Of a stretch of 64,000 bases of DNA, positions 36,307 through 40,655 are shown piece after piece. Source of the stretch: Magallana gigas (taxonomy: Eukaryota). The number at the start of each line of letters is the position of its first letter. The first letter of the stretch is position 1. A program made the translations under genes and the position numbers. The DNA lies in assembly GCF_963853765.1 (NCBI RefSeq), contig NC_088857.1, positions 38,068,001-38,132,000 on the forward strand, written 5' to 3'. The notes beneath the pieces are model-generated. The model was given only the letters and a program-made list of their open reading frames with translations. It did no database searches and was not told the DNA's origin.

Positions 36307-37290
36307 ATTCAAAACAATGTGTATTTTACATAACATCGATTTGCAACCCTTCAAATTTAGGATATGTTGATATAAATTGGAGTATGCTTATAAAAAAAAA
36401 CCCCAAATAGTATCCCTTTTTTTATAACTTCAATACCTTTTCTTTTATAGATTGGATCTGTGCTCCATGTTTGTCATGGTCTTAATAAGGTATAGTGGGA
36501 AAAGAACCAATTTCAATCAACAAAAAACGTGATGAGATGGCCCAATATACATTAAAAATATCATTTAATTTGTATCCCAACAATTTTAGAAAAATATTAT
36601 CCGTAAATACGTAGCTAAAGTCTGATAGAGCATTAAACAACTAATTTTGCTGTGACAGAAAGGGATCAGCGGTTAGAGCACGGGCATTAGGGAACCTTAA
36701 ATAACTAGGCTTTTTAAGTTATGGGTTCGATATATCCAAAACGTACGGCAATTTTCTTTCTTATCGTTTGCTAAAATATTCAATACTATACATAATTGGA
36801 AATTGTGCTTTTGCAAACTTGAATTATAACATTATCAAATACTAATATATTTAATTGGGAAAAAAAAATTGAAATTGTATTTTACGACTAAACCAAATTA
36901 TAAGCATTTGCACCATCTTTTCCCCCATCTTATTTTGATTTTAAGAGTCTAAATATTTGTAAATGACAATTGACTCATTTTGTGACATATCTTTTTTGTT
37001 TGGACAACAACCTTTCTCTGTTAATACATACTAACCAATATTAAAATTTTCGACTAACAGGCAATGAATGACTCCAAATAGACCAATAATGGCATATGAA
37101 TGTGTATTTCTACCATGTTGTGGAAAAGACATCTTGGACGCTTACATTATAACAAGACACGTCTATAATTACATCATGAAGTTGCTAGTACGTGCTTTGA
37201 AAACCAGACGAGTAGCATTGTTTTCAAATGTGTGTGCGTGTGTGTTGAAAGGGGAAAGGGGTGAAGATCTACCCTAATATCTTGGCAAGG

Positions 37291-38100
37291 AAACAAAAAC
37301 ATAGCCCACAGGCCTTGACGGTTACCTGAGTACCATAGCCCTTAGATTGCCATGTCAGAGATTCTCATGTTTGCATTTCAAGCTTCTTTTTTTTTAAAGT
37401 CTAAACCCTAATCTGAGACTCATACATGTGTGTGTGTGTGTGTTGGGGGGGGGGGGGGTCAAAAGTCGAAAGAATATTGGATGGTCTACATTGATGTTCA
37501 ATATAAAGCCATATTTATCACCCTTTCACCCCATGGCTAAGGTGGTGAATTTTACAATTTAGATTAGGACATTATGAACATACCAACAACTTAATCGCTC
37601 ACGATTGTGAAAGTGCAGAAGAAAATATTATCAAACCAATACATTTTCACTATGTTGCCATATTGAACCCATCCTAGGACCTGAACCCCCCTGTCTCAGG
37701 GACCATGAAGTAGAGGGCTTCATGGGCATCAAACTTACCAAACATTTAGTTTTCCTCAAATAATTATTTGAGCAGAGAAAAAATATGGTCATGACCCCAG
37801 ACCTGAATTCCTCTCCCAGGGGTCATGGATTTCACAATATAGATAGAGAACTTCTTGGACATCATGACCATGCATTTGATTTTCTCAAATGTATACTGGA
37901 GTAAAGAAGAGGATGTAGTACATTTTACTATATAATCTACTATAACCGTATAATTGTTTACCCACATGTGTGTGAGTAGAAAAAAGGAATTAAGTAAATT
38001 TGGCCTTTTTTGCATATTTAGCCTCGCCTATTAGGCCTCAGGTGTGGTAAAGCCATAAATTCCCCTAACCATTAAGATTCTTTACACTAAAAATGGTAAC
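37291..38100 (-). mobile_element. Degenerate HINE-like remnant in reverse orientation
   Basis: AAACAAAAACATAGCCCACAGGCCTTGACGGTTACCTGAGT resembles the reverse complement of the HINE 3' end; downstream degenerate CCCAGGGGTCATG-type satellite-like motifs. The far boundary is uncertain. Confidence 0.35.
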
Positions 38101-38931
38101 GTTTGGCCTTTTAGTTTTCAAAAAGAAATTAAACAAAACATTTTGGGTGGCATTGCGTTCCAATAAAGGATACATACAATAGCGAATAAGCTTTCCCCAT
38201 ACTTTTTTAAAGACTGTCCCCAAAAAATTGCGGAAAGGGGTCGTTAAAAATGTTGTTTTTACAAGTAAAAAAAACGCCGGTTTCAAAATACTTTTAAACT
38301 TCAGCTAAAAAGGTGTGAGCATTTGATTAAATTCAGTCTTATATGGCATTGTTCCTTTCGCATATTGGTAATGATTATTGGGTCTATTTTCTGGCACAAC
38401 AGTTTTTTTATCACCTAGCTCAAAACATCTCGTTTAATGGCTGTGTATCTATTATTCATATATATCCTGAAAACATGCTGTTATTCATATCCTGACTATT
38501 AAGAGCGATAGTTTTGAATTCAAAACAATGGTAGTTAGATACGTCATTCAGATTAACAGATAATGGTTGAAAACTCTTTCCATCACTTACTAACGAGTTC
38601 ATATTCATTATATATCAGTAAAAATTATCTTTTAGAATTAGTTCTATTTTTTTTTTAACGTAAGTTTTACAACGTAAACTTGAAAAAATCGATATCCGAA
38701 GACCAATGACTAAATGGTGATAATAAAATGTTTGAGAAAATATATAAAATATTACACGTACACACAAAGTTGATCACACCAGATATCAAAATTGTAATGA
38801 TTGAAAAAAGCCCAAGTCTGATCCAATTAAATAAAAAATAACTTTATTGGCCACTGTAACATGAGATCAAATACATTTTCGATAAAACATATTCCTTCGC
38901 TTTCAATTTTATGAACATGTATCTTCATTCT

Positions 38932-39171
38932 TCACTTCCGAATGGCATCTGCGCATGCTCGTCTGATCTTACGGTCACACATGCAGCAATATTCAAAAGA
39001 AGGTCCATACATTTCCCCACACGGTCCACACACTGGATTCAAAAGCTTAAACTGTATCAACGGAATCTCATCTTGGTCGCAAGGTTCACAAGGTAGCTTT
39101 CCTTTTACATCAACTATGTATTTGGCACTGCAGATTACAGTAAAGGCAGCAAGAACAATCAAAGACTTCAT
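38932..39171 (-). CDS. Small secreted cysteine-rich peptide, 79 aa (8 Cys in the predicted mature part)
   Basis: Signal peptide MKSLIVLAAFTVICSA; framework C-x2-C-x16-C-x2-C-x10-CC-x-C-x7-C; splice acceptor at 39188-39189, 16 nt upstream of the ATG; upstream non-coding exon and TATA box. Confidence 0.8.
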   Translation of the reverse strand: MKSLIVLAAFTVICSAKYIVDVKGKLPCEPCDQDEIPLIQFKLLNPVCGPCGEMYGPSFEYCCMCDRKIRRACADAIRK

Positions 39172-39995
39172 TCTAGCTCTTAGCGACCTTCAAGTTTGAG
39201 AAAAAGAGAATATTTCATTAAAAAATTGATTCAAACCAGGAATAGATTACTTCTATTGAAACAAAGATCTACCAAGTACGATTTCTGTCAATTTTTTTCC
39301 AGGTAAGTACAGTATACTTATATATAAAATGTGCCTTTCCGATGCACGAATTACAGGTACATGTATTTATATTTTTCTTTATTTTTATAAACGACTTTTG
39401 TTAATTATGTTTTTGTATAGATATAACTTTCAATGGACTTATGATAAAATTGATTACCATTTATGGAATATCATGTCTGCATAGCACGCTTTTTCGCAAT
39501 AAATATCACCGTGAAGAAAGTAATAATAATGCATCGTGTTTTTTTTTCCATTGCTATGGAACACAATTACACCTGAAAACCCGACATACGTGTGTTATGT
39601 CGGCGTGAAAAGCTAGATATATACGAAGATTATTTTTTAGTCCAATAACCCTAATTTGTGCGATCGATTTAATACACAATGTGACATGCACATATCACAG
39701 AATGAGAAACGGTGTTATACTTATGCATGACATTCTAACTTTTGTTTCTGCGTTTTAAAAACTGTTACATTTCTTCAGGCATGTTTAAGTAAAATTTAAC
39801 ACGTTTGCCCCCAAATTTCTCGAAAAGTCAAAGGAAAAAGAGCTTTCTTTAAATTAAACTGTTCAATAGATATCCTGTCTGAAATCCTTAAAAGTATGAA
39901 ATAAAAAATAGATTTACAAAACAAATAAAACCCCTTAAGTAGTCAACAACCCACATAAGCGTAAGAGTGACTTAAAACTGAACAAAACTACTTAC

Positions 39996-40595: not shown

Positions 40596-40655
<60 letters not shown>
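40596..40655. repeat. (AG)n microsatellite
   Basis: Uninterrupted run. Confidence 0.98.

What the first reader, a model, noticed from the sequence alone, without database searches (positions are those of the whole stretch)
38932..39171. Secreted 8-Cys peptide with a CHH/ITP-like core in a mollusc
Seen: signal peptide plus a mature peptide of about 63 aa, KYIVDVKGKLPCEPCDQDEIPLIQFKLLNPVCGPCGEMYGPSFEYCCMCDRKIRRACADAIRK. The segment FKLLNPVCGPCGEMY aligns without gaps to the recalled CHH/ITP signature F-x2-L-x2-V-C-x2-C-x3-Y (e.g. FSKLDRVCDDCYNLY), and the tail C-x7-C-ADAI parallels the CHH C-x8-C-hydrophobic helix. Differences: 16 rather than 15 residues before VC, a CC-x-C block, and 8 instead of 6 Cys. 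Established: the CHH/MIH/ITP superfamily is classically ecdysozoan and all-helical. Inference: a divergent lophotrochozoan member or convergent helical hormone, pheromone or defence peptide. I cannot tell whether this family is already annotated.
Basis: partly seen in the sequence, partly recalled or inferred. Interest (0 to 1): 0.75.

Follow-up and report, generated by a model that had tools for sequence, protein, structure and literature searches.

The report
Oyster eight-cysteine CHH-like secreted peptide gene
A small, intron-free oyster gene that is transcribed and strongly conserved encodes a secreted 63-residue helical peptide; it belongs to an undescribed eight-cysteine sister branch of the mollusc and annelid "CHH-like" peptides reported in 2023, so it adds a second, more crustacean-hormone-like lineage to that family.

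Summary
A 79-aa ORF (38932-39171, minus strand) encodes a signal peptide and the quoted 63-aa, 8-Cys peptide.

**It is a real gene.**
- Stranded polyA RNA covers only this ORF and its short UTRs, with no splice joints.
- dN/dS against two orthologues is 0.04-0.08.

**It belongs to a wider family.** An exhaustive profile search found 41 cluster representatives, of two types:
- An 8-Cys type with a single-exon CDS, which includes the window gene. It occurs in bivalves, gastropods and an annelid, and every entry is labelled "hypothetical".
- A 4-Cys type with two exons and a phase-2 intron. This type is the "CHH DREP" family of Koch et al. 2023, the first reported spiralian CHH-family peptides.

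Independent profiles of the two types match (hhalign 97%, E 1.2e-10).

**The fold looks like CHH.**
- AlphaFold2 gives a three-helix model (pLDDT 80).
- The best ESM Atlas match is an arthropod CHH cluster (TM 0.56).
- Pfam's CHH and eclosion-hormone models do not match.

It is not shown at sequence level, and spiralian CHH-like peptides are no longer new. What appears new is this 8-Cys subfamily, whose Cys15-x16-Cys32-x2-Cys35 spacing equals that of MIH. Its function is untested.

The parts
38932..39171 (-). Complete intronless coding sequence, 79 codons plus a TGA stop.
   Evidence: ORF listing and sequence. No splice joints in the RNA reads. dN/dS is 0.04-0.08.
39124..39171 (-). Signal peptide, residues 1-16 (MKSLIVLAAFTVICSA). 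Cleavage after Ala16 is predicted.
   Evidence: Read from the sequence: a hydrophobic core followed by C-S-A at -3..-1. Orthologues have equivalent N-termini. No signal-peptide predictor was run.
38935..39123 (-). Mature 63-aa peptide with 8 invariant Cys. Predicted helices at residues 22-39, 41-49 and 51-60. The C-terminal Arg-Lys is probably trimmed.
   Evidence: Alignments A3 and A4 show 8 invariant Cys plus Ala60. AlphaFold2 model with pLDDT 79.7. Fold matches to the CHH superfamily.
38843..38848 (-). Polyadenylation signal AATAAA, 84 nt after the stop codon.
   Evidence: Sequence. The RNA contig of X10 ends at 38822, about 21 nt downstream, and polyA-library coverage stops in the same bin.
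38822..39191 (-). Minimal extent of the unspliced mRNA, about 370 nt. The 5' UTR is at least 20 nt and the 3' UTR about 110 nt.
   Evidence: RNA-library contigs span 38822-39117 (X10) and 38855-39191 (X2). Stranded polyA reads of X22 are confined to 38837-39170, with a tail into 39171-39337 at depth 0.94.

Best explanation
The locus is an expressed, intronless gene for a secreted, disulfide-rich, three-helix peptide. It belongs to an ancient lophotrochozoan eight-cysteine subfamily (here 'type A'). That subfamily is the sister of the four-cysteine spiralian 'CHH DREP' peptides and shares the core fold of the ecdysozoan CHH/MIH/ITP hormones.

Proposed mechanism, step by step:
1. **Shown:** a polyadenylated mRNA of about 370 nt is made from the minus strand. 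Its level differs sharply between samples.
2. **Inferred from sequence:** the 16-residue signal peptide is removed. The mature peptide follows it directly, as in type-II CHH-family precursors.
3. **Inferred from the model, spacing and Cys co-loss:** the peptide folds into helices 22-39, 41-49 and 51-60, locked by four disulfides. Three would correspond to the CHH signature C1-C5, C2-C4 and C3-C6, namely C15-C49, C32-C47 and C35-C57. A fourth, C12-C46, would add a second staple between the N-terminal tail and helix 2.
4. **Inferred:** the conserved C-terminal basic pair (Arg-Lys) is trimmed by a carboxypeptidase. Relatives that carry C-terminal extensions have a basic pair at or near this position (RK, RKR, KRR), which would act there as a dibasic cleavage site.
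5. **By analogy only:** the peptide acts as an extracellular signal (hormone or neuropeptide) on a GPCR or a membrane guanylyl cyclase, the receptor classes discussed for ITP/CHH.
For: **The gene is real and expressed**
- Searches cover the ORF, the stranded polyA coverage, the absence of joints and dN/dS of 0.04-0.08.
- X21, from the same study and read to the same depth, shows zero coverage against about 13x in X22.

**Family**
- The exhaustive HMM search found 41 representatives at E<=1e-3.
- The 29 type-A domains share 8 invariant Cys, G36 and A60.
- Named members are Dreissena, Solemya, Elysia (two genes), Bulinus and Candidula, plus the annelid Lamellibrachia. All are labelled hypothetical or uncharacterised.
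- The type-A CDS is single-exon in the oyster, Lamellibrachia, Elysia and Dreissena.

**Link to the CHH DREPs**
- Type-B hits include OWF53087.1 and the Octopus and Dreissena entries printed in Koch et al.'s supplementary FASTA.
- hhalign of the type-A-only profile against the type-B-only profile gives 97% probability, E 1.2e-10, over 47 columns.
- The oyster type-B gene has the same phase-2 intron after 'VRR'.

**Fold**
- AlphaFold2 gives pLDDT 79.7 and an all-helical model.
- The top ESM Atlas hit is a PF01147 cluster, with TM 0.56 and rmsd 2.8 over 47 residues. All other hits are at TM<=0.46.
- Koch et al. obtained the same PDB neighbours for the Aplysia CHH DREP.

**Disulfide logic**
- The CHH signature Cys7-Cys43/44, Cys23/24-Cys39/40 and Cys26/27-Cys52/53 is taken from PMC8541221.
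- The window peptide has C15-x16-C32-x2-C35-x11-C47-x1-C49-x7-C57.
- Type B lacks exactly C12, C15, C46 and C49, and keeps C32, C35, C47 and C57.
Against: - No sequence-level match to Pfam Crust_neurohorm (PF01147) for any of the 39 family members at E<=10. The genome-wide scan with that model does not hit this locus either.
- Foldseek against the PDB finds nothing (best E 6.7).
- The loops after C35 are 1-2 residues shorter than in CHH, and the gene lacks the phase-2 intron that Koch et al. used as evidence of homology.
- The disulfide pairing comes from spacing and co-loss, not from coordinates or chemistry.
- The tissue of expression is unknown, and no peptide has been detected.
- The first AlphaFold2 run, with 6 sequences, was unreliable (pLDDT 49).
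Confidence: 0.6

Rival explanations
1. The fold is the same, but the peptide is not a hormone. It would be a secreted effector such as a defence or antimicrobial peptide, a pheromone or gamete-recognition peptide, or a toxin-like molecule. The CHH scaffold is only a stable framework in this reading.
For: - The closest solved structures are venom toxins (kappa-Ssm1a, Ssm6a, Ta1a), not hormones.
- The CHH scaffold has been recruited repeatedly for non-hormonal roles (PMC7560641; PMC10501145).
- Expression is on/off between two samples of one study, as expected for an inducible or tissue-restricted effector.
- The mature peptide follows the signal peptide directly, with no pro-region.
- The oyster visceral-ganglia neuropeptide catalogue does not contain its sequence motifs in the searchable supplements.
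Against: - Strong purifying selection (dN/dS 0.04-0.08) and conservation from bivalves to an annelid with one copy, or a few, per genome fit a signalling ligand better than fast-evolving, expanded immune or venom families.
- The conserved C-terminal basic pair resembles prohormone processing.
- The sister family is expressed in ganglia of Aplysia and squid.
Confidence: 0.25
2. The resemblance to ecdysozoan CHH/ITP is convergent. The spiralian family (types A and B) would be an independent invention of a disulfide-stapled three-helix peptide, with no common ancestry with CHH/ITP.
For: - No sequence-profile signal to PF01147.
- Different numbers of cysteines (8 or 4, against 6).
- Shorter inter-Cys loops.
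- Type A has an intronless CDS.
Against: - Out of 48,161 chains, the four best all come from the small group of CHH/MIH/HAND/centipede-toxin structures. An independent library of predicted models also puts a PF01147 cluster first.
- The spacing C-x16-C-x2-C is identical to MIH.
- The four Cys absent from type B are exactly those predicted to form the C1-C5 bond and its neighbour.
- Koch et al. report a matching phase-2 intron for type B.
Confidence: 0.3
3. The peptide is a divergent eclosion-hormone (EH) relative rather than a CHH/ITP relative.
For: - The core motif C-x2-C-G-E-M-[YF]-G resembles the EH core as I recall it.
- The only neuropeptide Pfam model touched by any family member is Eclosion (PF04736). 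The oyster type-B exon L002 hits it at E 0.064, 13.4 bits, profile positions 9-26.
- Two papers note that EH shows relatedness to ITP/CHH (PMC8398477).
Against: - The hit is below threshold (cut-off 25 bits), occurs in 1 of 39 members and is not the window protein.
- Oysters already have a described EH precursor, Cragi-EH (LOC105340619). Separately, EH-like exons were seen at C10 loci.
- The EH spacing of C-x3-C-x2-C (recalled, not tool-derived) is absent. Here the upstream Cys lies 16 residues before the C-x2-C, as in MIH.
- Structure searches return CHH-family entries, not EH clusters.
Confidence: 0.08
4. The C-x2-C ... C-x2-C-G arrangement is a zinc-binding ribbon or GATA-like finger. On this reading the protein is not a disulfide-bonded secreted peptide.
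For: - The family profile pulls GATA zinc fingers from PDB sequences (summed E 7.7e-4, per-domain about 0.36-5) and ribosomal zinc ribbons.
- Several members hit zinc-ribbon Pfam models weakly.
Against: - Full-length members carry hydrophobic N-terminal signal-like sequences.
- Type B lacks the first C-x2-C yet keeps the fold-defining C32, C35, C47 and C57.
- AlphaFold2 predicts helices, not a beta-hairpin ribbon.
- The matches rest on Cys spacing alone and are at or near noise level for single domains.
Confidence: 0.03

Closest known systems
Spiralian 'CHH DREP' peptides (Koch et al. 2023, Front Mol Neurosci 16:1176662, PMC10501145)
   Same: - Homologous by independent profiles (hhalign 97%, E 1.2e-10).
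- Shared core ...[IV]-C-x2-C-G-E-[MF]-[YF]-G...C...C-x2-A.
- Three predicted helices.
- The same PDB neighbours: kappa-Ssm1a, Ta1a and CHH/MIH.
- Found in molluscs and annelids.
- The oyster has two such genes on the same chromosome as the window gene.
   Different: - The window peptide has 8 Cys (4 predicted disulfides) instead of 4 Cys (2 disulfides).
- It keeps a structured N-terminal tail with C-x2-C, where CHH DREPs have a pro-region usually ending at a basic site (RR in bivalves and octopus).
- Its CDS is single-exon, whereas CHH DREP genes have two exons with a phase-2 intron.
- Motifs specific to the 8-Cys type are absent from all 14 supplementary files of that paper.
Ecdysozoan CHH/MIH/ITP superfamily (Pfam PF01147 Crust_neurohorm; structures 1J0T, 5XS1, 5B5I)
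   Same: - A helical core tied by disulfides between the N-terminal tail, helix 1 and helices 2 and 3.
- Best structural matches in the PDB and the ESM Atlas.
- The spacing C15-x16-C32-x2-C35 is identical to MIH C7-x16-C24-x2-C27.
- The mature peptide follows the signal peptide directly, as in type-II members.
- The size is about 60-75 residues.
   Different: - No Pfam match.
- Eight Cys rather than six.
- The loops C3-C4, C4-C5 and C5-C6 are 1-2 residues shorter.
- No C-terminal helix alpha5.
- No intron.
- The host is a lophotrochozoan.
- Function and receptor are unknown.
HAND toxins Ta1a (6URP/2KSL) and Ssm6a (2MZ4), and the centipede toxin kappa-Ssm1a (2M35)
   Same: - Like them, the peptide lacks the C-terminal alpha5 helix of MIH (PMC8541221).
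   Different: - Those are arthropod venom components.
- Sequence identity is only 16-21%.
- The oyster gene is under strong purifying selection and is single-copy, and it has no venom context.
Eclosion hormone (Pfam PF04736; oyster Cragi-EH)
   Same: - A six-Cys helical protostome or bilaterian hormone that is reported to resemble ITP/CHH.
- A weak Pfam hit of one paralogue to the C-x2-C-x2-M-x-G region.
   Different: - The hit is below threshold and is not in the window protein.
- The N-terminal Cys spacing is different.
- The oyster has a separate, described EH precursor.

Membership tests
CHH/MIH/ITP superfamily (PF01147) | Sequence match to the family profile (Pfam gathering score 25 bits). 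| tested here: not met
   - hmmscan of the window protein finds no family at E<=10.
- None of the 39 family members hits PF01147.
- The genome-wide scan with PF01147 does not hit this locus or its paralogues.
- The family profile against PDB sequences does not retrieve 1J0T, 5XS1 or 6URP.
CHH/MIH/ITP superfamily (PF01147) | Six invariant Cys forming C1-C5, C2-C4 and C3-C6 (Cys7-43/44, 23/24-39/40, 26/27-52/53; PMC8541221 and PMC7560641). | tested here: inconclusive
   - There are eight invariant Cys.
- Six of them can be mapped: C15, C32, C35, C47, C49 and C57. The C1-C2-C3 spacing is identical to MIH, and the later loops are 1-2 residues shorter.
- Co-absence of C12, C15, C46 and C49 in the 4-Cys paralogues fits the CHH connectivity.
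- No coordinates or chemistry were available to verify the pairing.
CHH/MIH/ITP superfamily (PF01147) | Common helical core (alpha2, alpha3, alpha4) with an N-terminal tail stapled to it. | tested here: met
   - AlphaFold2 gives pLDDT 79.7 and helices 22-39, 41-49 and 51-60.
- The top ESM Atlas hit is a PF01147 cluster with TM 0.56.
- The absolute scores are modest.
CHH/MIH/ITP superfamily (PF01147) | Gene structure with a conserved phase-2 intron (as cited by Koch et al. from Montagne et al. 2010). | tested here: not met
   - There are no joints in the RNA reads, and the ORF is contiguous.
- The CDS is also single-exon in Lamellibrachia, Elysia and Dreissena.
CHH/MIH/ITP superfamily (PF01147) | Neuroendocrine hormone activity through a GPCR or a membrane guanylyl cyclase. 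| not testable with these tools
   Only bulk RNA presence or absence could be seen. No tissue labels, peptide data or receptor data were available.
Spiralian CHH DREP family (Koch et al. 2023) | Detectable homology to the published members. | tested here: met
   - hhalign of type-A against type-B profiles gives 97% probability, E 1.2e-10.
- The type-B set contains OWF53087.1 and Octopus and Dreissena entries identical or near-identical to those printed in the paper's supplementary file 8.
Spiralian CHH DREP family (Koch et al. 2023) | [quoted passage not shown] In several members (bivalves, octopus) a basic pair (RR) precedes the mature peptide. | tested here: not met
   - The window peptide has 8 Cys, no intron and no pro-region.
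- The oyster's own type-B gene (L002) does show the GTGAGT donor after 'VRR' at codon position 2.
Eclosion hormone (PF04736) | Profile match and the EH cysteine pattern. | tested here: not met
   - The window protein has no hit.
- Only the paralogue L002 reaches E 0.064 and 13.4 bits, against a cut-off of 25.
- The genome scan with PF04736 hits other loci.
Zinc ribbon / GATA-type finger | A four-Cys metal site in an intracellular beta-hairpin fold. | tested here: not met
   - The matches rest on Cys spacing only.
- Signal-like N-termini are present.
- The model is helical.
- The paralogues lack half of the would-be ligands.
- Metal content itself is not testable here.

The most novel reading that the evidence does not exclude
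The eight-cysteine, intronless 'type A' peptides would be the true lophotrochozoan counterparts of ecdysozoan CHH/MIH/ITP. They keep all three ancestral disulfides plus one extra, and they have the exact MIH-type C1-x16-C2-x2-C3 spacing. The published two-disulfide CHH DREPs would then be a derived sister branch. That would place a three-disulfide ITP/CHH-type hormone in the protostome ancestor. It would also provide a compact ligand for finding the still-disputed ancestral receptor (GPCR or guanylyl cyclase) in a non-moulting animal.
Probability: 0.3. Interest if true: 0.75.

Novelty: new variant of a known kind. Interest (0 to 1): 0.55.

Why it matters
CHH/MIH/ITP hormones control metabolism, moulting, reproduction and ion balance in arthropods. 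They were thought to be restricted to ecdysozoans until two-disulfide relatives were reported in molluscs and annelids in 2023.

This locus shows that lophotrochozoans carry a second, older-looking branch.
- It has eight invariant cysteines.
- Its CDS is single-exon in every species checked.
- It is conserved from oysters to a tubeworm and is under strong purifying selection.
- It contains positions equivalent to the third CHH disulfide, which the published spiralian peptides lack.

If the pairing is confirmed, the case for deep homology would rest on more than fold similarity, and it would give a new orphan ligand for receptor deorphanisation in a commercially important bivalve. If the peptide is instead a defence or pheromone molecule, it would be one more recruitment of this scaffold. 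Either way the gene family is at present labelled only 'hypothetical protein' in public records.

Tried and rejected
- **Pfam scan, window protein and 6-member set:** nothing useful.
- **Language-model look-alike search (ESM Atlas features):** gave Kazal inhibitors at 0.84, which is below the tool's own reliability line. No Pfam Kazal hit supports it and the model is helical, so I rejected it.
- **First AlphaFold2 run with 6 sequences:** pLDDT 49, unusable.
- **Foldseek against the PDB, and its VIA re-look:** no match.
- **Family profile against PDB sequences:** returned only zinc-ribbon and GATA fingers through Cys spacing. I judged this coincidental.
- **Genome-wide scans of the oyster with PF01147 and PF04736:** only noise-level hits elsewhere. 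A repeat-protein ORF passed PF01147 by summed score but is unrelated.
- **Looking for a signal-peptide exon within 1.5 kb of the paralogues:** failed. It was found further upstream and confirmed by UniRef A0A8W8N405 and the splice sites.
- **Literature searches for the peptide's own motifs:** no hits in the paper library. There were also no hits in the supplements of the oyster ganglia catalogue, the mollusc prohormone survey or the spiralian neuropeptidomics paper. Some of those files were truncated and the figures are images, so absence is weak evidence.
- **PXRX/LXRX four-Cys family (PMC6425005):** considered and rejected, because its P[FM]R[WY] motif is absent.
- **Final word-index search with the 39-sequence profile:** added no new phyla.
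- **Not attempted:** a direct profile-profile comparison with an arthropod CHH or EH alignment. No tool supplied those sequences by reference, and I did not type long sequences from memory.
- **Not available:** model coordinates, so Cys-Cys distances in the AlphaFold2 model could not be measured.
Full report
**1. The observation**

The minus strand of the window carries an ORF at 38932-39171 of 79 codons. It starts with a typical signal sequence (MKSLIVLAAFTVICSA). A 63-residue mature part follows, with eight cysteines at mature positions 12, 15, 32, 35, 46, 47, 49 and 57.

ORF length alone proves nothing here. The DNA is 32% GC, and junk ORFs of 83-87 aa lie nearby, including one antisense to this ORF. 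No ORF of 110 aa or more exists anywhere in 28000-52000, so the gene stands alone in about 24 kb of AT-rich DNA.

**2. It is a real, expressed, constrained gene**

- *Relatives.* A word-index protein search found three relatives at 97%, 82% and 51-53% identity, and all eight Cys are invariant in them. The 97% relative lies on a 1.8-kb contig that is colinear with the window. Against that contig the CDS is 94.2% identical in DNA, and the 5' flank is 87.1% identical.
- *Selection.* Nei-Gojobori estimates give dN/dS = 0.0108/0.287 (0.04) and 0.108/1.357 (0.08) against the two closer orthologues.
- *RNA runs.* RNA libraries hold about half of the words of a 581-nt probe, which is what a short transcript would give.
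- *Laid reads.* Over 5 kb, stranded polyA raw reads of run X22 cover only 38837-39170 at depth 12-15. All first mates are on the + strand, so the RNA is from the minus strand. There are no joints.
- *Transcript ends.* RNA contigs span 38822-39117 and 38855-39191. An AATAAA signal sits at 38848-38843, about 21 nt before the contig end. The mRNA is therefore unspliced and about 370 nt long.
- *Regulation.* A sister run of the same study (X21), read to the same depth, shows no coverage at all. Expression is therefore condition- or tissue-specific.

**3. What family it belongs to**

Pfam finds nothing. In its own genome (an oyster, 564 Mb; window = chromosome-scale contig C5:38.07 Mb) the protein has only two weak relatives. 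They are 11 kb apart at C5:8.54 Mb and share the motif C-E-A-C-G-E-M-[YF]-G. With the family profile these two score E 5e-11 and 6e-10, and they remain the only other members in the genome.

An exhaustive HMM search of 1.84 billion representatives, using a six-sequence profile, returned 41 proteins at E<=1e-3. Read by eye, they form two types.

*Type A* includes the window gene.
- Architecture: signal peptide, then C-x2-C, 13-17 residues, C-x2-C-G-x-[ML]-[YF]-G-x3-E-[HYN]-C-C-x-C-x7-C-x2-A, usually ending in a basic pair.
- All eight Cys plus Ala60 are invariant in 29 domains.

*Type B* includes the two C5:8.54 Mb genes.
- Architecture: signal peptide, then a short pro-region ending in RR, then a peptide of about 48 residues.
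- It keeps only C32, C35, C47 and C57.

Named members of type A come from these species, all labelled hypothetical or uncharacterised:
- the bivalves Dreissena polymorpha and Solemya velum;
- the gastropods Elysia crispata (two genes on one contig), Bulinus truncatus and Candidula unifasciata;
- the annelid Lamellibrachia satsuma.

Type B members come from Octopus, Mizuhopecten, Pinctada, Potamilus, Dreissena and Magallana gigas (UniRef A0A8W8N405).

**4. Link to the literature**

Their supplementary FASTA prints OWF53087.1 (my P0030), the Octopus bimaculoides entry and Dreissena KAH3886336.1 (my P0065). My type B is therefore their family. The oyster type-B gene has a GTGAGT donor after the second base of the codon following 'VR' and a ttttgtag|A acceptor. 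That is the same phase-2 intron, about 1.46 kb long.

None of the type-A motifs (EHCC, EYCC, CGEMYG) occurs in any of the paper's 14 supplementary files. They are also absent from the paper library as a whole. The only later paper citing CHH DREPs is a 2026 review, which adds nothing on an 8-Cys form.

Independent profiles built from type A only and from type B only match with 97% probability, E 1.2e-10, over 47 columns. The window gene is thus a homologue of the CHH DREPs, but in a separate subfamily that appears to be undescribed.

**5. Fold**

- With six sequences, AlphaFold2 failed (pLDDT 49).
- With the 39-sequence alignment it gave pLDDT 79.7 and pTM 0.59. All five models scored 74-80, with helices at 22-39, 41-49 and 51-60 and a non-helical N-terminal tail.
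- Foldseek found nothing in the PDB.
- The Foldseek-independent aligner, run against 48,161 representative chains, ranked four chains on top:

|---|---|---|---|
| 1 | kappa-Ssm1a (2M35) | 4.0 | 47 |
| 2 | mu-SLPTX-Ssm6a (2MZ4) | 3.9 | 44 |
| 3 | molt-inhibiting hormone (1J0T) | 3.6 | 52 (model 9-63 on chain 0-59) |
| 4 | Ta1a (6URP) | 3.2 | 42 |

- Ta1a and Ssm6a are the 'HAND toxins' derived from CHH/ITP (PMC8541221; PMC7560641).
- The Z-values are small, as they must be for about 50 residues. The tool warns that such values can reflect common arrangements. Even so, four of four top ranks fall in one tiny structural group, the same neighbours that Koch et al. found for type B.
- A separate search of ESM Atlas models put an arthropod 'crustacean hyperglycemic hormone' cluster first (100% PF01147; TM 0.56, rmsd 2.8 A over residues 17-63). 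All other hits were at TM<=0.46 and unrelated.

**6. Cysteine logic**

The CHH signature is six Cys bonded C1-C5, C2-C4 and C3-C6. These are Cys7-Cys43/44, Cys23/24-Cys39/40 and Cys26/27-Cys52/53. They tie the N-terminal tail to helix 4, helix 2 to the loop before helix 4, and helix 2 to helix 4.

| Peptide | Cys spacing |
|---|---|
| Window peptide | C12-x2-C15-x16-C32-x2-C35-x10-C46-C47-x1-C49-x7-C57 |
| MIH | C7-x16-C24-x2-C27-x12-C40-x3-C44-x8-C53 |

- The first three canonical positions have identical spacing. The later loops are 1-2 residues shorter.
- The structural alignment range agrees with C15~C1, C32~C2, C35~C3, C47~C4, C49~C5 and C57~C6.
- Type B lacks exactly C12, C15, C46 and C49. 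These are the predicted C1-C5 pair and a neighbouring extra pair with matching x2 spacing on both sides. Type B keeps the predicted C2-C4 and C3-C6 pairs.
- This fits Koch et al.'s remark that their peptides share only two of the three CHH disulfide loops. It suggests that type A retains the third.
- This pairing is an inference. I had no access to model coordinates and there is no chemistry.

**7. What does not fit CHH membership**

- No member of the family hits PF01147, even at E<=10. The model does not find the locus in the genome.
- The CDS is single-exon in the oyster. It is also single-exon in Lamellibrachia, Elysia and Dreissena, where an annotated upstream exon adds a non-signal N-terminus and the whole prepropeptide lies in one exon. 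This contrasts with type B and with the intron pattern cited for CHH genes.
- The only neuropeptide Pfam model touched is eclosion hormone, by one paralogue at E 0.064. Oysters already have a described EH precursor, Cragi-EH (LOC105340619), whose authors noted EH-ITP/CHH resemblance. Separately, EH-like exons were seen at C10 loci.
- Profile searches against PDB sequences retrieve GATA fingers and zinc ribbons through the C-x2-C...C-x2-C-G spacing. I regard this as coincidental, given the signal peptides, the helical model and the type-B pattern.

**8. Most likely mechanism**

The chain is the five steps given under Best explanation. The mRNA (step 1) is shown. Signal-peptide removal and C-terminal trimming are inferred from sequence. 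Folding into a four-disulfide, three-helix CHH-like core is inferred from the model, the spacing and the Cys co-loss pattern. Action on a receptor is by analogy only: ITP/CHH are discussed as signalling through GPCRs or membrane guanylyl cyclases with cAMP or cGMP.

My estimates are:
- about 0.9 that the gene belongs with the spiralian CHH-DREP clade;
- about 0.6 that this clade is truly homologous to ecdysozoan CHH/ITP;
- about 0.55 that the peptide is a signalling molecule rather than a defence, pheromone or toxin-like effector.

**9. Novelty and verdict**

Its CHH/ITP-like interpretation passes the structural tests it proposed, though not the sequence-profile test.

The general idea of CHH-like peptides outside Ecdysozoa was published in 2023, so the finding is not categorically new. 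What is new, as far as the searched literature and databases show, is the eight-cysteine, single-exon subfamily. It is conserved across molluscs and at least one annelid. It carries the positions of the third CHH disulfide. I class it as a new variant of a known kind, of moderate to good interest.

Noticed in passing
G000:C5:8542348-8542494 (L002/L031) and C5:8553262-8553405 (L003/L030): Two tandem oyster genes of the published 4-Cys 'CHH DREP' type lie 11 kb apart on the same chromosome as the window gene, 29.5 Mb away. The first matches UniRef A0A8W8N405, apart from one signal-peptide residue, and has a phase-2 intron of about 1.46 kb after 'VRR'. No oyster entry appears in the part of Koch et al.'s FASTA that I read (part 1 of 3).
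   Followed up: partly
window 37167-38168: A dispersed, transcribed repeat. RNA reads and contigs lie on it only in part, at 90-95% likeness, with many loose ends and inconsistent 'joints'. It is not connected to the peptide gene.
   Followed up: no
window 40596-40655: A perfect (AG)30 microsatellite about 1.4 kb upstream of the peptide gene.
   Followed up: no
G000:C10:36111265-36111333 (L007) and C10:33367832-33367891 (L010): Two exons encode I-C-V-K-N-C-x-x-C-x-T-L-L. They are weak hits to Pfam Eclosion (E 0.38 and 3.3). I did not check whether they correspond to the published Cragi-EH precursor, which carries two EH ligands.
   Followed up: no
P0016 (ENA metagenome contig); L034 (Elysia crispata contig JAWDGP010007658.1): One relative carries two tandem 8-Cys domains in a single precursor. 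Elysia crispata has two 8-Cys genes (RRG08_019378 and RRG08_019381) on one 119-kb contig. Local duplication of the domain or gene therefore occurs in some lineages.
   Followed up: no
Family profile A4 against PDB sequences: The spacing C-x2-C-x16/17-C-x2-C-G-x-[YF] mimics GATA-type zinc fingers closely enough to give a summed E of 7.7e-4. This is a possible source of mis-annotation for these secreted peptides.
   Followed up: partly
window 39087 (codon 29 of the ORF): All 18 polyA reads of run X22 read G instead of C on the + strand, which is Glu29 to Gln in the P-C-E-P-C motif. The 97% relative P0001 and P0002 carry the same residue, so it is a polymorphism or a between-lineage difference at a non-Cys position. 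Several other differences at 30-60% of reads (38896, 38964, 38972, 39052, 39061, 39115) were not checked for coding effect.
   Followed up: partly
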